Source: Octopus sinensis
Lineage: Eukaryota
NCBI RefSeq assembly: GCF_006345805.1
Contig: NC_043022.1
Coordinates: 6,200,001 to 6,264,000 of the forward strand
Length of the DNA: 64,000 nucleotides
Direction: 5' to 3'
This document shows, in pieces, positions 38,187-49,895 of the stretch. The notes beneath the pieces were generated by a model. The model ran no database searches and was not told where the DNA came from. It saw only the letters and a program-made list of their open reading frames with translations. A program made the position numbers and the translations under genes. How positions within the stretch are numbered: the first letter of the stretch is position 1; each line of letters starts with the position of its first letter.

Positions 38187-38964
38187 TGTATATATACATT
38201 GGATATATTATATACATATATGTATATACACATATATAATGTACATCCCAGATATATATATAATGTGTAACTATATCTGTAAGTTAAGGATATAATCATA
38301 AAAATGATCATATCAGTGGCCTAGTGTATAAAAATGACTGTATTGGTAAAATTAGTTTTTAAGTATATAATTATAAAAGCTAATTATAATTAAGGGCTCT
38401 TGAGTGCCAACACCTATGCTAGAAGTAAATGTAAAATACCGACAATCCCCTCTAAATTTGTTCTCTGTTTATAACCCAAGGCCAAATGAGCAAGAAGATT
38501 TACAAGATTTCATGTTCTGCAATAAAAGACAGCAATTGCTTGACTCTTTCCACATGGACCTCCACTCGCCTGTGCTCATCCGGAATGCAGGAATAAGTCT
38601 AACGCACCAGTGCTGCCAGACAGCTCTGTCAACCGTACGAAGGCGCTGGACCGTGCATGTATGCAGCAAAGCAACAACAGCTGCCAGAAAACGGCAGAGA
38701 TCAAAGGCAACTGACAAGAGAAGCAGGTACACACAGGTGTTCGATATCTCGTTTACCTCTGCCTGGAAGCTTGCAGGTTGGCATGTGGGCAACATCATGC
38801 TTCTCTTGTCACTTGCCTTCGATCTCTGCCATTTTCTAGCAGCACCACAACAACCGTTCTGCAGAGGTGGCCACGCTGGATTTCCATCCCTCTCTCCTGC
38901 TTGTTGTTCTACTGCTGCACGTGCCGCTTCCCATCAATATCTGCTTCCATTGTGGTCATGCCTC

Positions 38965-39562
38965 TATTTCTTTATTGCCCACAAGGGGCTAAACATAGAG
39001 GGGACAAACAAGGACAGACAAATGGATTAAGTCGATTATATCAACCCCAGTGCATAACTGGTACTTATTTTATCGACCCCGAAAGGATGAAAGGCAAAGT
39101 CGACCTCGGCGGAATTTGAACTCAGAACGTAGCGGCAGACGAAATACCTATTTCTTTATTACCCACAAGGGGCTAAACACAGAGGGGACAAACAAGGACA
39201 GACAAACGGATTAAGCCGATTATATCAACCCCAGTGCATAACTGGTACTTATTTTATCGACCCCGAAAGGATGAAAGGCAAAGTCGACCTCGGCGGAATT
39301 TGAACTCAGAACGTAGCGGCAGACGAAATACCTATTTCTTTATTACCCACAAGGGGCTAAACACAGAGGGGACAAACAAGGACAGACAAACGGATTAAGT
39401 CGATTATATCGACCCCAGTGCATAACTGGTACTTATTTTATCAACCCCGAAAGGATGAAAGGCAAAGTCGAACTCGGCGGAATTTGAACTCAGAACGTAA
39501 CGGCAGACGAAATACGGCTACGCATTTCGCCCAGCATGCTAACGTTTCTGCCAGATCTCCGC
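38965..39562 (-). mobile_element. SINE family B, head plus three 184-bp bodies
   Basis: Units start 38965, 39149, 39333; 15-bp TSD ttgtggtcatgcctc. Confidence 0.9.
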
Positions 39563-39664
39563 CTTGTGGTCATGCCTCCTGCTGCTGGCAGCACCCTGTG
39601 CGCATGGTCGATATCATGTCCACCATCATCAATCTCTGCAGCGGTCTGGCACCTTCTAGCAGCT

Positions 39665-41214
39665 TCTGCTGGTCACAAAGGGCCTGTCGCTCAGAGTAAA
39701 AGGTAGACTGTACAAGTTATATGTATGAACAGCCATGCTACATGGCAGTGAAACATGGGCTACGACTGCTAAAGACAAGCTTGCAAGGAATGAAGCCAAT
39801 ATGCTCTGCTGGATGTGCATACTCGACAGAGTGTAAGTACCTTGAGAGAAAAGTTGGACCTAAGAAGCATGAGATCTTGTGTGCAAGAGAGACGACTGCA
39901 CTGGTATGGTCATGTAGCGAGAATGGATGAATACAGTTGTGTGAAAAAGTGTCACACCCTAGCAGTAGAGGGAACCTGTGGAAGAGGTAGACCCAGGAAG
40001 ACCTGGGATGAGGTGGTGAAGCACGACTTTTGAATGTTGGGCCTCACCAAGGCAATGACAAGTGACCGAGACCTTTGGAGAGGTATGCTGTGATTGAGAA
40101 GACCCGGCAAGCCAAGTGAGACCATAACCCGTGGCCTATGCCAGTGCTGTATAACCAGCCAGTCTAAGACTACTCTTCAATCATTGGGCAACATACTGGG
40201 CTTGTGAAGACCTGTTGAGGCAAGTGAAATCATTGTCATGGCTGATGACAGTACCACCTGATTGGCACTTGTGCCAGTGGCACATAAAAAGCACCATTCA
40301 AATGTGATCATTGCCAGTGCCACCTGACTAGCTCCCATGCTGGTGGCACATGAAGAGCACCATTTGAGTGTATTCCATGCCAGTGGCACGTAAACGGTAC
40401 TATCCAAACGTGATCAATGCCAGGCCCGCCTGACTGGCTCCTGTGCCCATGGCACGTAAAAAGCACCCACTATACTCTCAGAATGGTTGGCATTAGGAAG
40501 AGCATTCAGCTGTAGCAACCTTGCCAGATCAGATTGGAGACTGGGGCAGCCACTGGCTCTCCAGACCTCAGTCAAACCGTCCAACCCATGCCAGCATGGA
40601 AAATGGACGTTAAACAAGGATGATGATGATACGTACAATATGTATATTATATATATCTTTTATCTTTTACTTGTTTCAGTCATTTGACTGCGGCCATGCT
40701 GGAGCAGTGCCTTTAGTCGAGCAAATCGACCCCAGGACTTATTCTTTGTAAGCCCAGTACTTATTCTATCGGTCTCTTTTGCCGAACCGCTAAGTGACGG
40801 AGACGTAAACACACCAGCATCGGTTGTCAAGCAATGCTAGGGGGACATATATATACATTGGATATATTATATACATATATGTATATACACATATATAATG
40901 TACATACCAGATATATATATAATGTGTAACTATATCTGTAAGTTAAGGATATAATCATAAGAATGATCATATCAGTGGCCTAGGGTATAAAAATGACTAT
41001 CGGTAAAATTAGTTTTTAAGTATATAATTATAAAAGCTAATTATAATTAAGGGCTCTTGTGTGCCAACACCTATGCTAGAAGTAGATGTAATATACCAAC
41101 AATCCCCTCTAAATTTGTTCTTTGTTTATAACCCAAGGCCAAATGAGCAAGAAGATTTACAAGATTTCATGTTCTGCAATAAAAGACAGCAATTGCTTGA
41201 CTCTTTCCACATGG
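39665..41214 (+). repeat. Local duplicate of 36797-38557 (RTE 3' end, half SINE A, AT-rich segment)
   Basis: Collinear with scattered substitutions and a ~240-bp deletion. Confidence 0.92.
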
Positions 41215-41626
41215 TATTGCATTAGATGCGAATAATTACAGAGGTATCAAGTTGTTGGACCATAGTCAACTGCTACAAAGGTAAAGGTGATGCATTAGAT
41301 ACAAATAATGGCAGAGGTATCAAGTTGTTGGATCAGGTAATGAAAGTCATGGAGAAGGCCATAGCCCAACTAATTAGGGAGAGAGTCAGTCTAGACGAGA
41401 TGCAGTTTGGGTTTGTACCAGGGAAAAGGACCACTGATGCTAAATTTCTGGTAACACAGCTGCAGGAGAAATACCTAGCCAAAGATAAACCTCTGTACCT
41501 GGCTTTTGTAGACATGGAGAAAGACTTCGACAGGGTCCCCCGATCCCTTATCTGGTGGTCAATGCTGAAACTAGGGATAGGTGAGTGGTTAGTGAGAACC
41601 ATGCAAGCCATGTACAGGGACGCTGT
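41213..41626 (+). pseudogene. Duplicate RTE RT fragment (copy of 35829-36195)
   Basis: TIVNCYKGKGD...MYRDAV shared with ORF 35720..36202. Confidence 0.92.
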
Positions 41627-42495
41627 GCTCATCCGGAATGCAGGAATAAGTCTAACGCACCAGTGCTTGCCAGACAGCTTCATCAACAGTACGAAGGAGC
41701 TGGGCCGTGCATGGATGCAGCAAAGCAACAACAGCTGCCAGAAAACGGCAGAGATCAAAGGCAACTGACAAGAGAAGCAGGTACACACAGGTGTTTGATA
41801 TCTCGTTTACCTCTGCCTGGAAGCTTGCAGGTTGGCATGTGGACGACATCATGCTTTTCTTGTCACTTGCCTTCGGTCTCTGCCATTTTCTAGCAGCACC
41901 ACAACAACCGTTCTGCAGAGGTGGCCACGCTGGATTTCCATCCCTCTCTCCTGCTTGTTGTTCTACTGCTGCACGTGCCGCTTCCCATCAATATCTGCTT
42001 CCATTGTGGTCATGCCTCTATTTCTTTACTACCCACAAGGGGCTAAACACAGAGGGGACAAACAAGGACAGACAAACGGATTAAGTCGATTATATCGACC
42101 CCAGTGCATAACTGGTACTTATTTTATCGACCCCGAAAGGATGAAAGGCAAAGTCGACCTCGGCAGAATTTGAACTCAGAACGTAACGGCAGACGAAATA
42201 CGGCTACGCATTTCGCCCAGCATGCTAACGTTTCTGCCAGATCGCCGCCTTGTGGTCATGGCTCCTGCTGCTGGCAGCACCCTGTGCACATGGTCGATAT
42301 CATGTCCACCATCGTCAATCCCTGCAGTGATCTGGCACCTTCTAGCAGCTTAGCCAGGACCGTACAGCAAAAGCGGCTGCACTCGACTGCATTCCCTCTC
42401 TCCTGCTCGTCCCCATCCAAGTGCTCTCTTTTTCTTGCTAGCTCTCACACTGCTCACCACCTGACCTCTTCTTCAACTCAATCCGTGGCTGCCAT
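41624..42495 (-). other. Probable rDNA 3' ETS/spacer downstream of the 28S fragment, interrupted by SINE B (42019-42249); partly duplicated at 38570-39662
   Basis: GC-richer sequence contiguous with the 28S 3' end once the SINE and its TSD are removed; inference. Confidence 0.5.
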
Positions 42496-42623
42496 CATCA
42501 CTGCCTCGGAAGGGTAGATCGTGACATTTGTGAGATCGCAGTGTGGTATCTGCTCGACACCTCGAACAACAAGTCGAGTCGTATGCAAAGGTGATTTGTG
42601 TCTTGCTCTTTATGTCTTGATTT
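42495..42623 (-). pseudogene. 28S rRNA pseudogene, extreme 3' end
   Basis: tgacatttgtgagatcgcagtgtggtatctgctc resembles the reverse complement of the conserved 28S 3' end (TGACTTTCAATAGATCGCAGCGAGGGAGCTGCTC). Confidence 0.6.
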
Positions 42624-43117
42624 TGTAATGGTCTCCATAGCTAAATAGTTGAACAATCTCCCTTGCAAGAAAGATTATAGAGTAACCTCCCTTTTCTAAG
42701 TTTCTCGAAGCATCTGTGTCATGAGATGTGATTCTTAATTTTTCAAGAAGCTTGGTGTTTCTCTTGGAAGTTTCTAGAATGTCTAGCGTTGCATTAATAA
42801 AAAACAGTTTGCTAACCCTGCTCTTCACTTCTTAGTCCATTGCTATGTCCATCTATCTCTCTATGCCACATGACTGAAAACCACCACTTAGCTGTTATTT
42901 CTACATTTTCTGTCTCTGAACTTTCTTGCATAGATTACTTCATTCAACTAGATGCTGCTTATTGATTCTATGTATCGTCATCGACCAGTAAATAAAATAT
43001 ATTTTTCTGTATTAAATATATAGTTCTTGAATTTATTCTTCATCTCTTTATGAACTCTTGTAACAACATACACACAGCCACATCAACACCTTGTACTGAC
43101 TATATATTTCCACTTCA
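42624..43117 (+). mobile_element. Gypsy LTR, 494 bp, inverted relative to the element
   Basis: TGTAATGG...CCACTTCA; about 20 differences from the reverse complement of 46669-47162. Confidence 0.92.
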
Positions 43118-43125
43118 TAAATTGG

Positions 43126-46100
43126 CACCCCTGCTCCAAGCAGAGGTAACATTATACTATAATGAAAATAATAAAAATGTATACATCATAAAATGCCAAA
43201 CTATAGAAACATATCACAGTTCAAATGTAATAAATGTTTGTTAAATTCTTGGGTCAATGCACGTGTCTTCCTTGGTCAGATGATTGTTCCTGCAAACACG
43301 CAAAATATCGACACTACCAGTTTTGTTGAACGCTTGCGGGATTATGTCAAAGTTCCCACATGTGACCACCAGAAAACAAGACATTAAAACATATTTGCCC
43401 AAGGACTATTCTTCCTGGACTCTTTGTTCGCAACGATGCCTTTAAACACCCTTTAACAGCACCGTATTCAGGACCCTTTCGTGTACTTTCTTGCACCTTG
43501 GACCTTAATGGTCATAATGGCACTGTTTCTGTTGATAGACTAAAAAGGGCTCACATGAAAAACAAACCATTTCCAACCCCACAACAGACAACACACACAC
43601 AGCATTACAAACTATCGTGTTTGCAGGAACAACCCTCTGACCAAGAAGCGTCAAGGAAGAACCATAAAGTAATTCTGCAGGAGAATACCCCATGTATTCT
43701 TTGATAGAAGAGCAGAGACCCAAGAGAAGAATAGGAAGAAATTCAATCCATCGAGTTGAATCAGCAGAAACACAGAATGCAGCTTTAAGCGTTGGTGAAA
43801 TCTTTCGATCACACCATTCTTAGGTGGGGATGTGTTTGGTTCCTAGAATCTTGGTAAGCTACTGGAAAAGCTTAGTTTCGAATTGTCGTCCACGATCTGT
43901 TATTTTCACAGCTGTTCCGAAATGAGAGATCCATCTTGTGACTAAAGCTTGTGCCACAGTTTGAGAAAGAGATGTCTGTGAGTGGAATCACTTCTGGCCA
44001 GAGTGAAAAACGATCAATACAAGTTGATAGAAATGTATAGCCCTGACTATATCAGCATGCATGTGCTGGAATTGTGTATCTGGGGAAGAGAAAGTGCCTA
44101 ACGGTGCATGATGTCGCCTGCATCCCAACCTGCAAGCTTCCAGGCAGAGGATATGTTTATGGACTTTGGATTTTTGACACCTGACACAGGTACACAACTC
44201 CAATTAGTTGTCTCGACGCATTTTGTGAAGTTTCTCCTTTTCAAAAGGTGTTGGAAGTGTTTAACTGAGAGGCAGGTAGCTTAGAGAAAAAGGCCAGAGG
44301 TTGCTATTTGCCATGGTGGACTGTGCCAATGCCAATTTCAGACCTGTTGACTACAAAAGAAATTTCGGCATCAGGAATGGGGTGAGCCAATATGGAGACA
44401 CAAGAAAATTTTTGTTTAACATCGCCGAAAGCTTGCATTTCAGCAGGAGTTAAAGTGATCTTTTCTGTTCTGTTCTTGCAGTGTCAAAGTAATTTGTTGG
44501 GAGGGTGTATAGTTTCAGCACAATGAGGAATAAAATGTTGATAGAAATTAATCCAAGAAATTGTCTGAGCTGTCTTAATGAAACAGGAACTGGAATTTTG
44601 CGATAACCTCAACCTTTTCTGGCCCAATTCCTTACTTGGTGTGTCCAAGGAAAGTGGGAAAAGGCACACCGAAAATACAGTTGGTAGCATTGATACGAAT
44701 TTTGTATCGAGAAAGCCTTTTGAATAATTGCTAGAAATGAAGCTCACTTTCTTTCTCGGAAGATCTAGCGATGAGAAGATCATCAATATAGGTGTAGACA
44801 AAATCTAATCCACGTATTACTTCATGAATGAAACCCTGAGAAGTACTGGCAGTATTCTTCAACCCAAAGGGCATGGTAGGAAATTCAAATGACCCAAATG
44901 GAGCTGCAATAACCGTTTTTGGAATATCATTTGCGTTGACAGGAATCTGATGGCATGCTCATATCGAATCTTTTTTTGAGATGATAGTGCAACCATGCAG
45001 AGAAGTTGCAAAATATGTAGTATAGGATGGTATAGGATAGCTCTCTGGAATGGTAACAGTGTTGAGTCATCTTTGGTCACCAGTAGGTCTAAAATCACTA
45101 GATTCCATTTTCACCAAATGAAGTGGTGATGACCATTTACTCTTTGAAGGACAAATTATTCCAAGCTGGAGCATGTGGCTGAACTCTGCTGTAGCAGCTT
45201 TGAGTTTTTCAGGTGGTAAGCGTCTCAGGTGCGAGAAAACAGGAGATCCATTGGTGGTTATATGATGAATAGATGAAGCATTGATATTAAAAGTAAAACT
45301 TTCGATCATACCGTTCTTAGGTGGTTGGTAACTGGCGGAGGGGATGTGTTCAGGAAAGGACTAAAGCAAGGCTTGACATTTATCTGGTTGATTTGCAATA
45401 AAAGACGGTTGGGCTGACAGAAGTGGAATTGAAACAGCTTCCTAAATCGCATAACTGTGTATTGCTATCGATAAGTCAATTTCTTTTGACATCCAATAAT
45501 AGGGAAAAATGATGGGGAAAATCAGCCCCTAAAACTGGGTGAGGAAGGTCAGCAGTGATAGAAACCCACTGGAAACTTCGTCTGAGATTCAGGTCCAGAG
45601 TGAGTGAAATCTCACCGAACGTTTTAATAAGAAAACTGTTGACTGATTGAAGAGATTTGTCAGAAGTGAAAAGTTTTTCTTTCACAAATTCAGACGGCCA
45701 TATACTGCAGGACGCTTCAGAATCAACTAGAAATGCCTTCTTAAACTTGAAATCTAGTATGTAAAATGCACAACTAAGAGAAAATATGCCGGGAACTGTG
45801 GTTACGCTTGGAGTCTGGCTTTTTAGTTTTCCTGAGTTTTAAATGTACAAAGTGAAACACATCTTTTAGCTGCAGAACCAAACTTATAACGATATCAGCA
45901 AAAAGGTTTGATCTGCTGGGAGAACACGAATTTGAACGACGATAGCAACGAGGTGAAGAACTTCTATTGATACGCAAGAGACAAACTTCTGTGACTAGCT
46001 TGTCTATAGTTTTCTGCATAGATTCACAGAATTCTTTGAATTCAGAAGAAACTGTAGCAATTGGCAAAGGAGTGTTGTTCTGTTCTGGAGTGGATTTTGT

Positions 46101-46660
46101 ATACTCAAAATTTTATCTGCCGATGCTGCAAGTTGGTCGACTGTGTTAACGTCTGTCAAATGGGTGAGGATACCTTGAACATTCTGTGGTAATCTGGAGA
46201 AGAAGAATTGTTTAAGCAACTTACTTTCAGCAGAGTTGTTGCATTTTGATGGTGTTCTGTCCCCTAAATGTTCATTGAGGCATTTTCGAACCTTCTTTTC
46301 AGAAGAGAGCAAGGTTCGTCTTAAAATTTCATTTTTAATTGATAAATACGTTGCATCTGCCGGTGGAGATGTAACAATATCTCATAATTCTCCAGTTAAT
46401 GGTGGTGCTATAGAACTAAGTAAAATGTAGAGCTACTGTTGGTCTGAATTGTGTTTGCTTGCAGAGAAAAATGCTTCTAACTGGGCAAAGCAGACAGCAA
46501 TATCTGCTGTGAAAATTGGTAAAACTGGAAGATTCATAGCAGATATCATCGTTGTTTGAGTTGAAGATAATTTAGTAGAAGAAAATTGTGATATGGAAAG
46601 TAGTAGAATATAACTAAATATGTCGGATAGTAACCAATTTATGATTATTCTCAGAGTCAC
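43126..46660 (-). pseudogene. Ty3/Gypsy (CsRn1-like) gag-pol, decayed
   Basis: Gag LPIF..D..V.FAQLEA and LGDRTPS..FF.RLP; CHCC knuckle; protease FLVDSEAS; RT WSSPLHLVK; integrase C..CQKSK, DRGRQFE, YSPAELLYG; many stops. Confidence 0.92.
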
Positions 46661-46663
46661 CCA
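46651..46663 (-). promoter_or_regulatory. Degenerate primer-binding site (tRNA-Trp-like)
   Basis: Minus-strand tgggtgactctga versus expected TGGTGACCCCGA, a few nt inside the 5' LTR junction. Confidence 0.5.
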
Positions 46664-46668
46664 ATTTA

Positions 46669-47162
46669 TGAAGTGGAAATATTTAGTCAGTACAAGGTGT
46701 TGATGTGGCTGTGTGTATGTTATTACAAGAGCTCACAAAGAGATGAAGAATAAATTCAAGAACTATATATTTAGTACAGAAAATATATTTCATTTACTGG
46801 TCGATGACGATACATAGAATCAATAAGCAGCATCTAGTTGAATGAAGTAATCTATGCAAGAAAGTTCAGAGACAGAAAATGTAGAAATAACAGCTAAGTG
46901 GTGGTTTTCAGTCATGTGGCATAGAGAGATAGATGGACATAGCAATGGACTAAGAAGTGAAGAGTAGGGTTAGCAAGCTGTTTTTTTATTAATGCAACGC
47001 TAGACATTCTAGAAACTTCCAAGAGAAACGCTAAGCTTCTTGAATGATTAAGAATCACATCTCATGACACAGATGCTTCGAGAAACTTAGGAAAGGGAGG
47101 TTACTCTATAATATTTCTTGCAAGGGAGATCTTTCAACTATTTAGCTATGGAGACCACTACA
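46669..47162 (-). mobile_element. Gypsy 5' LTR, 494 bp
   Basis: Minus-strand TGTAGTGG...CCACTTCA followed by PBS and gag. Confidence 0.92.
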
Positions 47163-47617
47163 ATCTCTTCGAACAAGTCGGGTGGGACACTGGCCCAGGA
47201 AGACTGCCGTTCCAGAATGGCATTTCCACCGGTGACGCTGCTGCTTGCTGTGAGGATGCAACGGGTGAGCTAAGGCATGCGCCTTGAGGTTGAGACACTT
47301 TTGGAAAACAACTTGGTTCTGGCTTAGAGGTGACTGACCATTATTGCTCAGAGGCAGCCTGGTACCTCTGCTCTATCAACCGAGTGCACAAACCATTGAT
47401 CTGATGCCACGGTTCCTCTCGTACTTTACGGGATAGCCATAGCAGAATTTACATTGCCAGTGCCTGCCTAAGGTCAGCAGAAGTGTCTGCGGCAGTGACA
47501 GATGACGTGTAAGTATGCCACCACCGAAGCACACCAAACCCCCGATGTGACTCAGAGCACCACATATGCATAATGCATCAGTAGAATAAAACTAACCTTT
47601 CTCACAACGGTCTAAAC
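47163..47617 (-). pseudogene. 28S rRNA pseudogene fragment including the sarcin-ricin loop
   Basis: ggttcctctcgtact (47411) is the reverse complement of AGTACGAGAGGAACC; catcagtagaataaaactaacctttctcacaacggtctaaac and ggttctggcttagagg match conserved 28S blocks in order. Confidence 0.88.
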
Positions 47618-48810
47618 CAGGAGTGGGGAAACCCCACCCACGGGTGGAATTGCACCCGCAGCCTGGTGTACTCATAGGTACAAAATAAAGTAAATTTTTC
47701 AATTATAAAATTTATACAATACTCGTATACCTATTTGCAACATAGGTTGGGTTTCCACATCGACTTAAAATGGTTAGACTCGAACAGAAATCTCTGGTAA
47801 TTGCCATTTGAATGGAAATTTTGGTTTCACTACAAAACACATATTTCTAGGTTTATACCACCCACTTAAAACTAGAAATATATTGCATGTATCGAAATAA
47901 TTTTTATATAAAACAAAAGCTGACAACCTCTTAGAATTTCGTTAATTCTGACCATCGTCCCTTAATTCCGACTGACCTGTTCGCTGGCCATTTTTATTTT
48001 TATTCTGCCACACAATGACGACACGCAAAGCTAAGAATATTTTTCTCTTTTTTTCTTTTTTTTTCTTTCTTCTCCCTCTCTACTCCGCTCCTAAATATCT
48101 TAGATGTAGAAGATACTGTGTAAACATTATTCCAAGAATCCTAAGTATTCTATTTTTCCTCCCTATTTCATTTTTCCTGTTTTTACAAAAAAAATCTCCA
48201 AAATCGAGACCCACCCTCTTTTTGTCAATCAATAAGCAAAAGATATTTTAAAAATCTATTAAAAATCAAAAACAAATTGGTAAAGCTTCATCAAAGCAGA
48301 AACTACTAATTTGGTGTTTTGTGAACAGGATTATAAAAAAAAAAAAAACCTTTTTTTTTTTGAAAAAGCAGTGAAAAACGTTTTTTTTTTTAAAGGGGTG
48401 TTGCATTTTTGCTATCAGTTAGTCTCAAGAAGGTCAACCGAAGTTACTTTCATCTGCAATCGGCTTATCAGTTATCTCCCTTCCCTATCCACTCATTTGT
48501 CAATGGACAAAGGAGAGAGAAAAATCAAACCTTGCAGAACCAAACAATATCTGATTTTTTTGTAGATTTGTATTTTTTACAATACTAAATGCATGCAATA
48601 CAACCACGTGCCGGTTGGCTTTTGTTTTTCCTGGGCAGCAGTAATAACAAAAATTCCAAAAATTATAATATAAATTTAACTGGTTTATAACTTAAACCTT
48701 GTTAAATCAATTTTTCAATACCCTTATCAATATGGCAAGCGGTTATAAAAATCCTATAAAATAAAGTGCTTTGATGAAAAATGGACTGAGTTTTATTTTT
48801 GATTGAAATA

Positions 48811-49210
48811 GGCGCAGGAGTGGCTGTGTGGTAAGTAGCTTGATTACCAACCACATGGTTCCGGGTTCAGTCCCACTGCGTGGCATCTTGGGCAAGTGTC
48901 TTCTGCTATAGCCTCGGGCCGACCAATGCCTTGTGAGTGGATTTGGTAGACGGAAACTGAAAGAAGCCCGTCGTATATATGTATATATATATAAGTGTAT
49001 GTGTTTGTCTCCCTAGCATTGCTTGACAACTGATGCTGGTGTGTTTACGTCCACGTCACTTAGCGGTTCGGCAAAAGAGACCAATAGAATAAGTACTGGG
49101 CTTACAAAAAATAAGTCCCGGGGTCGATTTGCTCGACTAAAGGCGGTGCTCCAGCATGGCCGCAGTCAAATGACTGAAACAAGTAAAAGAGAGAGTAAAA
49201 GAGAGTAAAA
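48811..49210 (+). mobile_element. SINE family A
   Basis: Near-consensus copy inside the transposase. Confidence 0.92.
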
Positions 49211-49493
49211 GGTAACAGGTGCAACAAACAAGCAGCAGTTCATAATACAGAGAGGCATTTTGTGAGGAAGCATAAGACCTATGGAAATTTGAAAGAATCG
49301 GAACGTTTTGACAAGATAGCCTCCTTCAAAAACAAAATCTGACCAAAGAACAAGCTTTTTTTAAAAGGCCAATTCTTGAAAATTAATCAGTTAGTCGAGA
49401 CAGTCGGTATACAAAAATATTGGTAAAAAACTCAAAGCACACAGTGATGGTGAATTGGTGAAAGAATGTATCCTTACTGCTGTTGAGAATATA

Positions 49494-49895
49494 TACTCTT
49501 TACTCTTTTACTTGTTTCAGTCATCTGACTGCGGCCATGCTGGAGCACCGCCTTTAATCGAGCAAATCAACCCCAGGACTTATTCTTTTGTAAGCCCAGT
49601 ACTTATTCTATCGGTCTCTTTTGCCGAACCGCTAAGTAACGGAGACATAAACACACCAGCATCGGTTGTCAAGCAATGCTAGGGAGACAAACACAGACAC
49701 ACAAACACACACATATATATATATACATATATACGACGGGCTTCTTTCAGTTTCCGTCTACCAAATCCACTCACAAGGCTTTGGTCAGCCCGAGGCTATA
49801 GTAGAAGACACTTGCCCAAGGTGCCACGCAGTGGGACTGAACCCGGGACCATGTGGTTGGTAAACAAGCTACTTACCACACAGCCACTCCTGCGC
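49494..49895 (-). mobile_element. SINE family A
   Basis: Near-consensus copy splitting ...AVENI / CPEEG... Confidence 0.92.

What the first reader, a model, noticed from the sequence alone, without database searches (positions are those of the whole stretch)
42624..47162. Ty3/Gypsy retrotransposon with INVERTED LTRs and two U3 ends
Seen: 42624-43117 is the reverse complement of 46669-47162 (494 bp each, about 20 differences by eye). Both LTRs are followed inward by taaattgg, the 5'-LTR/PBS junction. On the coding strand the PPT (ggagcagggg) plus TG is joined to ccaattta and the inverted LTR. The outer ends read TGTA...TACA, flanked by ATTT / ATCT, and the 28S host continues on both sides. Known: Gypsy LTRs are direct repeats; CsRn1-clade elements have a CHCC gag, tRNA-Trp PBS and 4-bp TSD. 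Inference: integrase inserted an aberrant cDNA whose 3' LTR was copied backwards from the 5' LTR, or a family with TIR-like LTRs exists. Divergence between the LTRs argues against an assembly artefact. Transcripts could form ~0.5 kb of dsRNA.
Basis: partly seen in the sequence, partly recalled or inferred. Interest (0 to 1): 0.85.

Follow-up and report, generated by a model that had tools for sequence, protein, structure and literature searches.

The report
Dead Gypsy retrotransposon, 3' LTR flipped
This is one old, broken copy of a CsRn1-type Gypsy retrotransposon whose 3' LTR and a piece of its integrase gene each lie backwards in place, most likely from a faulty reverse transcription, and nothing suggests a new kind of element.

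Summary
The inverted repeat is real. Window 42624-43125 is the reverse complement of 46661-47163, with 19 differences in 503 aligned columns, and it bounds a minus-strand gag-PR-RT-RH-IN element.

The element belongs to the CsRn1 clade of Ty3/Gypsy. It has a degenerate tRNA-Trp primer-binding site (PBS), a remnant of the CHCC gag motif and a candidate 4-bp target-site duplication matching at 3 of 4 positions. It is dead, with 11 in-frame stops in 712 homology-guided codons.

- **"28S host" is wrong.** No rRNA is found anywhere in the window.
- **The family reading has no support.** All six related loci fetched from other assemblies show a direct repeat pair around pol and no inverted pair.
- **A second flip was missed.** The integrase C-terminal block (43271-43615) is also inverted in place, flanked by a 30-nt inverted duplication.

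Along the coding strand the order is sense, antisense, sense, antisense.

The flipped LTR block begins within 2-3 nt of the polypurine tract (PPT) and carries T+TGG, the start of the PBS. It ends exactly at the U3 terminus. [quoted passage not shown]

Best reading, which is inferred: one aberrant cDNA made by strand-switching reverse transcriptase and integrated through two U3 ends. It cannot replicate further. No genome-wide search for more copies was possible.

The parts
42620..42623 (.). Left candidate target-site duplication, ATTT
   Evidence: It matches the right candidate ATCT at 3 of 4 positions. The chance of at least 3 of 4 is 0.051 with the local base composition.
42624..43121 (+). 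Left LTR copy, U3 to U5 on the + strand, so backwards relative to the coding strand. It starts TGTAATGG and ends ..CACTTCATAAA.
   Evidence: The U3 start TGT(A/G)G is shared by relatives L001, L002, L003, L004 and L006. The LTR end ..TAAA follows L004, L005 and L006.
43122..43125 (+). T spacer plus TGG, the first three bases of the tRNA-Trp PBS, carried along with the flipped LTR
   Evidence: The same T+TGG follows the right LTR. TCATAAATTGG occurs three times in the window, all inside the element, against 0.07 expected.
43126..43140 (-). Polypurine tract plus short spacer, CTTGGAGCAGGGGTG on the coding strand
   Evidence: Relatives have (C)ACTGGAGGGGGAGTxx directly before their 3' LTR.
43141..43270 (-). 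AT-rich 3' untranslated stretch, in the normal (sense) orientation
   Evidence: The middle block 43126-43270, which includes the PPT, is 31% G+C and has no significant copy anywhere else in the element. Its length resembles the 158 nt between the integrase stop and the PPT in L002. The orientation is inferred from the PPT.
43271..43300 (+). Left copy of a 30-nt inverted duplication (encodes LGQMIVPANT)
   Evidence: I5, 93% complementary to 43616-43645
43301..43615 (+). Integrase C-terminal coding block lying backwards in place, through ..VSVDRLKRAH
   Evidence: tblastn of the L003 integrase: residues 249-302 map on the + strand at 43420-43566, E 1.9e-9. BLASTP gives E 8e-7. A weak collinear match covers residues 199-253.
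43616..44191 (-). Integrase zinc-finger and catalytic core, ending with the right copy of the 30-nt duplication (43616-43645)
   Evidence: L003 integrase residues 31-209 map to 44113-43610 on the minus strand.
44227..45285 (-). Reverse transcriptase (YIDD box in 44731-44874) and RNase H, with stops and frameshifts
45476..45685 (-). Probable protease region
   Evidence: Inferred from its position between gag and RT and from the peptide ..LGADFPHHF... There was no Pfam hit.
45847..46552 (-). gag, with a degenerate CHCC knuckle C*YR-x9-C-x3-C at 45900-45847
   Evidence: Relatives' gag carries Pfam DUF7041.
46634..46664 (-). 5' leader. It holds the degenerate PBS TGGGTGACTCTGAG (46650-46663) and a second copy of TCATAAATTGG 27 nt downstream, followed by a second PBS-like stretch.
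   Evidence: The PBS consensus TGGTGACCCCGACG comes from relatives.
46665..47162 (-). 5' LTR in the normal orientation for the coding strand
47163..47166 (.). Right candidate target-site duplication, ATCT

Best explanation
This is a single, old, non-functional insertion of a CsRn1-clade Ty3/Gypsy retrotransposon, and its DNA copy was mis-made before integration.

Along the coding (minus) strand it reads:
- sense: 5' LTR, PBS, gag, PR, RT, RH and integrase to about residue 209
- antisense: integrase residues about 314 back to 200
- sense: 3' UTR, PPT and a short spacer
- antisense: TGG, T, U5, R, U3

Inferred mechanism: while making the plus strand, reverse transcriptase twice left its template and copied back a same-sense strand before going on. 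At the 3' end that strand was a free plus-strand strong-stop DNA (U3-R-U5 plus the first bases copied from the tRNA primer). Run-off at its 5' end left a second U3 terminus. That terminus ends ...CCATTACA, close to the normal U3 end ...CCACTACA. Integrase then inserted a molecule with two U3 ends and made a 4-bp duplication.

The product has no sense-oriented R at its 3' end, so it cannot be reverse transcribed again. It has since decayed in place.

Shown: the structure, the junction positions and the clade.

Inferred: the timing (before integration), the polymerase involved, the link between the two flips, and any dsRNA output.
For: - **The inner edge of the flipped LTR lies at a cDNA landmark.** The inner border is 2 nt after GGAGCAGGGG. 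In relatives a G-rich PPT plus a 3-nt spacer sits at that position before the 3' LTR.
- **The block carries PBS bases.** It carries T+TGG, which occurs naturally only next to a 5' LTR or at the 3' end of strong-stop DNA. A chance 4-nt match is 1 in 256.
- **The outer edge is the U3 terminus.** The outer border is exactly the U3 terminus TGTA.
- **Flanks.** The flanks ATTT / ATCT match at 3 of 4 positions (chance 0.051). The clade makes 4-bp duplications: GCAT is perfect in L004, and PwRn1 has a 4-bp duplication (PMC2582038).
- **No TSD around the left LTR alone**.
- **A second flip with the same signature.** It lies 145 nt away. Block order is kept, and the first bases of the block are present once in sense and once in antisense: 30 nt there, possibly TG here. 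The 30-nt copies differ at 2 of 30 positions, compatible with the 3.8% between the LTR arms.
- **The middle block is single-copy**, so the structure is not a decayed palindrome.
- **Precedent.** Integrated proviruses with inversions are a known minor class (two of the unique proviruses in PMC9278108, 1.3% each). A guppy foamy-like ERV 'has inverted LTR' (PMC5210030).
Against: - Only one locus could be examined. There is no empty site, no read support and no second copy.
- The TSD is imperfect.
- Only 3-4 nt, not 8, lie beyond the LTR if the LTR ends ..TAAA.
- A strong-stop DNA that copied just CCA of the tRNA, rather than about 18 nt, needs a special assumption.
- No microhomology was seen at the junctions.
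- The integrase flip touches no cDNA landmark. It could be an unrelated later DNA event, which would show that this locus rearranges after integration.
- Coding decay (11 stops in 712 codons) is more than the 1.9-2.9% divergence per arm predicts (P about 0.007 even with CpG mutating 10 times faster). The arms may therefore be younger than the body, or homogenised.
Confidence: 0.58

Rival explanations
1. Rearrangement after integration. A normal copy with direct LTRs was inserted. Host replication or repair (serial template switches, or breakage and rejoining) later flipped two blocks in place.
For: - The integrase flip (345 nt with a 30-nt inverted duplication) looks like a host template-switch or staggered-break inversion and has no link to cDNA ends.
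- The LTR arms are less diverged than the coding decay suggests.
- The arms have a 173-nt core with no differences (P 0.006). This shows DNA-level exchange between the arms after insertion.
Against: - An in-place flip of a 3' LTR would carry 4 nt of host flank, not T+TGG (chance 1/256).
- That original flank would then not match the TSD on the other side.
- Both breakpoints would have to fall within a few bases of the LTR borders.
- Copying from the 5' LTR, 3.5 kb away, gives no reason to stop exactly at the U3 terminus.
Confidence: 0.2
2. Two separate elements. The left LTR belongs to a second copy in the + orientation (5' LTR plus the start of its PBS), and a deletion joined it to the 3' end of the minus-strand copy.
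For: - The left arm is of the 5' LTR type, with T+TGG after it.
- The arms differ by 3.8%, as two family members might.
- The region is full of nested repeats.
Against: - The deletion end-points would have to fall 3-4 nt after one LTR and 2 nt after the other copy's PPT.
- Nothing else of a second copy is present.
- This does not explain the integrase flip.
- The outer flanks show a 3-of-4 TSD-like match.
Confidence: 0.07
3. Assembly or read artefact, for example a chimeric long read or a wrong path through a repeat graph.
For: No reads were available to check. Inverted joins are a known failure mode in repeat-rich assemblies.
Against: - The structure is not a symmetric fold-back.
- The arms differ at 19 positions.
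- The novel junctions lie at the repeat borders, not inside shared sequence.
- Two separate flips, each with clean borders, are hard to produce by mis-joining.
Confidence: 0.08
4. A replicating lineage, or a selected hairpin-RNA locus, in which inverted LTRs are the normal state.
For: It cannot be excluded, because the source genome could not be searched. A 0.5-kb inverted repeat plus inward-facing LTR promoters could yield dsRNA.
Against: - All six relatives show a direct repeat pair and no inverted pair.
- This is the only copy in 64 kb.
- The coding region is dead.
- The integrase is DDE-type, not a tyrosine recombinase.
- Without a sense 3' R, the LTR replication cycle cannot close.
Confidence: 0.03

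Closest known systems
CsRn1 clade of Ty3/Gypsy LTR retrotransposons (CsRn1, PwRn1, AgCR; PMC2582038)
   Same: - tRNA-Trp PBS
- CX2HX9CX3C gag knuckle, a remnant here and intact in relatives
- PR-RT-RH-IN order
- PPT directly before the 3' LTR
- 4-bp target duplication
- Corrupted coding regions despite similar LTRs, as also reported for a PwRn1 copy
   Different: The 3' LTR and an integrase block are backwards. RT identity to the nearest proteins found is only 51-57%, so this is a separate family within the clade. No direct comparison with CsRn1 or PwRn1 sequences was made.
Defective integrated retroviral proviruses with internal inversions (HIV-1, PMC9278108), and a guppy foamy-like ERV noted to have 'inverted LTR' (PMC5210030)
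   Same: They are integrated copies carrying inverted segments or an inverted LTR. PMC9278108 lists inversions among proviral defects. Attributing them to reverse-transcription errors is my own reading, not a statement read from that paper.
   Different: Those are vertebrate retroviruses. Here the junctions can be mapped to the PPT and the PBS. I did not find that level of detail described for an LTR flip in the papers I could search.
DIRS-type retrotransposons (inverted terminal repeats, tyrosine recombinase)
   Same: Terminal repeats in inverted orientation around an RT-bearing element about 4.5 kb long
   Different: - The integrase is DDE-type and there is no tyrosine recombinase.
- A tRNA PBS and a PPT are present.
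- Relatives have direct repeats.
- The resemblance is superficial only.
Short template-switch mutations and copy-back (snap-back) synthesis by strand-displacing polymerases. This comparison rests on my own knowledge, not on a paper read here.
   Same: In-place inversion with block order kept, and an inverted duplication at one border
   Different: Those events are usually tens of bases long and made by host or phage polymerases. Here the blocks are 345 and about 500 nt long, and one of them uses a retroelement-specific template end.

Membership tests
Ty3/Gypsy LTR retrotransposon | pol order PR-RT-RNase H-integrase, with a DDE integrase | tested here: met
   tblastn places gag, RT-RH and integrase collinearly on the minus strand. 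Relatives carry RVT_1, RT_RNaseH_2, RT_RNaseH, Integrase_H2C2 and rve.
Ty3/Gypsy LTR retrotransposon | Two LTRs as direct repeats | tested here: not met
   The LTRs are inverted in this copy. All six related loci show a direct repeat pair and no inverted pair. This copy is an aberrant member and does not define the family.
Ty3/Gypsy LTR retrotransposon | PBS next to the 5' LTR and PPT next to the 3' LTR | tested here: met
   The PBS TGGGTGACTCTGAG follows the 5' LTR. The PPT CTTGGAGCAGGGGTG abuts the flipped LTR.
CsRn1 clade | gag CHCC motif CX2HX9CX3C | tested here: inconclusive
   This copy has C*YR-x9-C-x3-C at 45900-45847, with W changed to a stop and H to R. The motif is intact as CWYH-x9-C-x3-C in L001, L002, L003 and L005. 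The definition comes from PMC2582038.
CsRn1 clade | PBS complementary to the 3' end of tRNA-Trp | tested here: met
   The copy here is degenerate, with about 4 differences in 14. TGGTGACC or TGGTCACC is present in all six relatives. PMC2582038 gives TGGTGAG/CCCCGT/A.
CsRn1 clade | 4-bp target-site duplication | tested here: inconclusive
   ATTT against ATCT matches at 3 of 4 positions, with a chance probability of 0.051. No empty site was available.
CsRn1 clade | Placement with CsRn1 and PwRn1 in an RT phylogeny | not tested
   No reference sequences of the named elements were fetched and no tree was built.
DIRS-like elements | Tyrosine recombinase instead of a DDE integrase, plus an internal complementary region | tested here: not met
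   Integrase homology is to rve / Integrase_H2C2 proteins. No recombinase ORF was found.
Fold-back (palindromic) dimer of the element | Arm similarity running inward well past the LTR | tested here: not met
   Similarity stops after LTR+T+TGG. The block 43126-43270 has no inverted copy in the element.

The most novel reading that the evidence does not exclude
The inverted-LTR form is not a one-off. Either a lineage of CsRn1-like elements spreads with TIR-like LTRs by some non-canonical route, or this locus is kept as a hairpin/convergent-transcription source of small RNAs that silence the family.
Probability: 0.04. Interest if true: 0.8.

Novelty: new member of a known kind. Interest (0 to 1): 0.3.

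Why it matters
If the reading is right, this locus is a natural fossil of a reverse-transcription accident. Its junctions can be placed to within a few bases of the PPT and the tRNA primer site, and it still became integrated. That would show an integrase accepting two U3 ends in vivo. It would also give a concrete example of copy-back strand switching in an invertebrate Gypsy element.

Its practical value is for annotation. LTR finders that demand direct repeats would call this a truncated element plus a solo LTR. Dating by LTR divergence would also mislead here, because the arms show a conversion-like identical core.

It does not change the current picture of LTR retrotransposons.

Tried and rejected
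- **Searches for the 28S host.** Rfam at gathering score on the whole window and at E<=1 on 40000-49500 found no rRNA, only a sub-threshold mir-297 hit.
- **Other copies in the window.** There are none, for the LTR or for the internal pieces.
- **Other copies outside the window.** A conserved 24-mer of the LTR gave 0 hits in metagenome contigs. Two window ORFs are not in the protein-position index. The RT search found nothing closer than 57% identity.
- **Empty site from a paralogue.** The immediate flanks are unique in the window.
- **'Solo LTR with its own TSD'.** Rejected, because the flanks of the left LTR do not match.
- **'TGGCACCCCTGC is a PBS of a second element'.** Rejected. I found no convincing match to tRNA 3' ends I could recall (from memory, not a search). 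The same bases read on the other strand match the clade's PPT motif in the right place.
- **Decayed palindrome (fold-back dimer plus deletion).** Rejected.
- **Autointegration circle, nested inversions, and recombination between the LTR's own 8-bp terminal inverted repeats.** Each predicts a block order or a junction that is not observed. This was worked out on paper only.
- **First stop count.** My first count, 12 stops in 360 codons, mixed reading frames. The homology-guided count is 11 in 712 codons.
- **Pfam on single ORF fragments.** These were mostly too short to score.
Full report
**1. The observation**

The inverted repeat is real. The repeat finder reports three adjoining inverted pairs that together cover 42623-43125 and 46661-47163. 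blastn gives 96.2% identity over 495 columns. A MAFFT alignment shows 19 differences in 503 columns: 13 transitions, 4 transversions and 2 gap columns.

- The outer ends read TGTAATGG and CCACTACA.
- Both arms are followed inward by TAAATTGG.
- On the minus strand GGAGCAGGGG-TG is joined to CCAATTTA and the inverted LTR.
- The flanks are ATTT and ATCT.

The "28S host" is not there. Rfam found no rRNA in the whole window at gathering score. It found none in 40000-49500 at E<=1 either, only a sub-threshold mir-297 hit.

The left flank is a repeated unit: 41623-42351 is about 96.5% identical to 38570-39665. It contains an RVT_1 ORF at 41226-41768 and 184-bp SINE-like units. The DNA directly next to the element on both sides has no other copy in the window, so no empty site could be reconstructed.

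**2. What the element is**

The internal region codes on the minus strand for gag, a probable protease, RT (YIDD box), RNase H and integrase. An RT query finds proteins at 51-57% identity that carry RVT_1, RT_RNaseH_2, RT_RNaseH and Integrase_H2C2.

I fetched six related loci, L001 to L006, from other assemblies. They are compact elements, about 4.1-4.9 kb where not interrupted. Across the set they show these features:
- Every locus has a direct repeat pair around pol, and none has an inverted pair. Five pairs are clear LTRs. The L005 pair starts TTCACGC and encloses a DIRS-like element, so it is doubtful.
- The U3 start is TGT(A/G)G in five of the six.
- A G-rich PPT plus a 3-nt spacer sits directly before the 3' LTR in five of the six.
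- The LTR ends ..ACA or ..TAAA.
- A spacer of 0-2 nt follows.
- The PBS is TGGTGACC(CCGACG).

Four of the five relatives whose gag region I checked carry CWYH-x9-C-x3-C. This is the CHCC signature that, together with a tRNA-Trp PBS and a 4-bp TSD, defines the CsRn1 clade (PMC2582038). L004 shows a perfect 4-bp duplication, GCAT.

The window's copy has the following:
- a degenerate PBS, TGGGTGACTCTGAG
- a CHCC remnant, C*YR-x9-C-x3-C, at 45900-45847
- 11 in-frame stops in 712 homology-guided codons, plus frameshifts

**3.

tblastn with the relatives' integrases maps L003 residues 31-209 on the minus strand at 44113-43610. Residues 249-302 map on the plus strand at 43420-43566, with E 1.9e-9. 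Pairwise BLASTP confirms this:
- Minus strand 43723-43616 matches residues 172-207, ending ..LLGQRVVPANT.
- Plus strand 43498-43566 matches residues 280-301..VSVDRLKRAH.
- Plus strand 43271-43384, starting LGQMIVPANT, aligns weakly but collinearly to residues 199-253.

The two LGQ..VPANT stretches are the 30-nt inverted repeat I5 (43271-43300 and 43616-43645, 93% complementary). The integrase C-terminal block 43271-43615 therefore lies backwards in place, with a 30-nt inverted duplication at its borders.

Between this block and the flipped LTR lies 43126-43270. It is 31% G+C, it has no significant copy anywhere else in the element, and it ends in the PPT. I read it as the 3' UTR plus PPT in the normal sense orientation.

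The coding strand is therefore sense, antisense, sense, antisense. The order of the blocks is unchanged.

**4. Where exactly the LTR flip begins and ends**

- **Inner border.** This is the PPT (CTTGGAGCAGGGGTG; compare CACTGGAGGGGGAGTAC|TGTAG in L002) followed at once by CCA-A-TTTATGAAG.., the complement of U5-end, T, TGG. The relatives have a 3-nt spacer after the G run. The TG here may therefore be a spacer, or it may be the first two bases of U3.
- **LTR end.** By analogy with L004 (..ACTAAA G TGG), L005 (..GTTAAA T TGG) and L006 (..ACTAAA C TGG), the LTR ends ..CATAAA. The extra bases shared by the arms are then T+TGG, 4 nt with a chance probability of 1/256, and not 8 nt.
- **Outer border.** This is exactly the U3 terminus.

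U3-R-U5 followed by the first bases of the PBS is the composition of a 5' LTR with its neighbour. [quoted passage not shown]

**5. Explanations**

A flip of an ordinary 3' LTR after integration would carry host flank, not T+TGG. It would also need both breaks within a few bases of the LTR borders.

Copying from the 5' LTR by a host polymerase gives no reason to stop at the U3 terminus.

A second element joined by a deletion would need both end-points to fall on functional borders. It would also leave no other trace of that second element.

An autointegration circle, nested inversions, and recombination between the LTR's own 8-bp terminal repeats each predict a block order or a junction that is not seen. 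I worked these out on paper only.

A fold-back dimer is excluded because arm similarity stops after LTR+4 and the middle block is single-copy.

The reading that fits best is an error of reverse transcription. The growing plus strand copied the PPT (plus TG), then switched to the 3' end of a free strong-stop DNA that had copied only CCA of the tRNA. It ran off at that strand's 5' end. The result is a cDNA with two U3 ends, ...CCACTACA and ...CCATTACA, that integrase could use.

The flanks agree at 3 of 4 positions (chance 0.051), which is compatible with a 4-bp duplication that has since mutated once.

The integrase flip has the same form: order kept, and the first bases of the block present in both sense and antisense. 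It could belong to the same event. Its 2 differences in 30 nt are compatible with the 3.8% between the arms. This link is an inference. The flip could equally have been inherited from the template, or have arisen later.

**6. Age and later history**

The 19 differences between the arms are not spread evenly. There is a core of 173 nt without any difference (about 42821-42993), and the probability of such a run under even spread is 0.006. Outside the core the arms differ by about 5.8%. This looks like a gene-conversion tract between the inverted arms.

Coding decay is more than a per-arm divergence of 2-3% predicts. P is about 0.007 even with CpG sites mutating ten times faster. Without a CpG effect, about 15% divergence would be needed.

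Either the RNA template was already defective and was copied in trans, or the arms have been homogenised. A PwRn1 copy with a corrupted body and 99.7% identical LTRs is on record.

**7. Comparison with what is known, and novelty**

The element is an aberrant member of a known clade. Integrated proviruses with inversions are a known minor class: two of the unique HIV-1 proviruses in one study carried inversions, 1.3% each (PMC9278108). A guppy foamy-like ERV is described in passing as having 'inverted LTR' (PMC5210030).

In the papers I could search, 'inverted LTRs' as a family trait belongs to DIRS elements. Those use a tyrosine recombinase, which is absent here.

Nothing supports a family with TIR-like LTRs. 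The relatives show direct repeat pairs, this is the only copy in 64 kb, and a copy without a sense 3' R cannot complete the first strand transfer.

The dsRNA idea is reasonable but untested. It rests on a 0.5-kb stem in any read-through transcript, and on two LTR promoters that would face each other if they are still active.

**8. Limits**

The source genome could not be searched. The decisive test, counting loci with this junction, remains open. So do read support and an empty site.

I read the element only in pieces. I neither printed nor assembled it whole.

Noticed in passing
window 43271-43645: The integrase C-terminal coding block (43271-43615) is inverted in place inside the element. 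It is bracketed by a 30-nt inverted duplication (43271-43300 / 43616-43645), and both copies encode LGQ..VPANT.
   Followed up: yes
window 46634-46671 (minus strand): The 11-mer TCATAAATTGG (U5 end plus PBS start) occurs twice, 27 nt apart, in the 5' leader. Each copy is followed by a degenerate tRNA-Trp-like PBS. A third copy lies at the flipped-LTR junction (43115-43125). The window holds 3 matches against 0.07 expected. This looks like a tandem duplication of the U5-end/PBS unit.
   Followed up: partly
window about 42821-42993 and its partner in 46669-47162: A 173-nt core of the LTR arms has no differences, while the rest differs by about 5.8% (P 0.006 under even spread). This suggests gene conversion between the inverted arms, so LTR-divergence dating would be unreliable here.
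   Followed up: partly
window 41810-41854 and 38756-38800: A 45-nt stretch in the repeated left-flank unit is 91% identical, in the opposite orientation, to the element's integrase zinc-finger region (44106-44150). It may be a fragment of a related element embedded in an older repeat.
   Followed up: no
window 41623-42351 vs 38570-39665; 184-bp units at 38964-39515 and 42018-42201: The left flank is part of a duplicated unit about 96.5% identical to its partner. It holds an RVT_1 ORF (41226-41768) and tandem 184-bp SINE-like units, which are also scattered through the window.
   Followed up: partly
window 48808-49197 and many other sites: A dispersed repeat of about 390 bp is present in many copies (well over a dozen) in both orientations across the 64 kb, at roughly 66-92% identity. 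The window is very repeat-rich, with many AT, GA and TC microsatellites.
   Followed up: no
L005 1017-5156: Next to the relative in L005 lies a DIRS-like unit, with RVT_1 + PCIF1_WW followed by a Phage_integrase (tyrosine recombinase) gene. It sits inside the 9.2-kb direct-repeat pair found there, and that pair is not clearly the relative's LTRs.
   Followed up: no
L004 8452-12437: A Copia-type element (RVT_2, rve, gag_pre-integrs) is nested in reverse orientation inside the relative. This stretches its LTR-to-LTR span to 9.7 kb.
   Followed up: no
L001 and L003 LTR flanks: These two relatives show no matching 4-bp duplication at their LTR borders, although the LTRs of L001 are 99% identical over their first 68 nt. 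They may be recombinants between copies.
   Followed up: no
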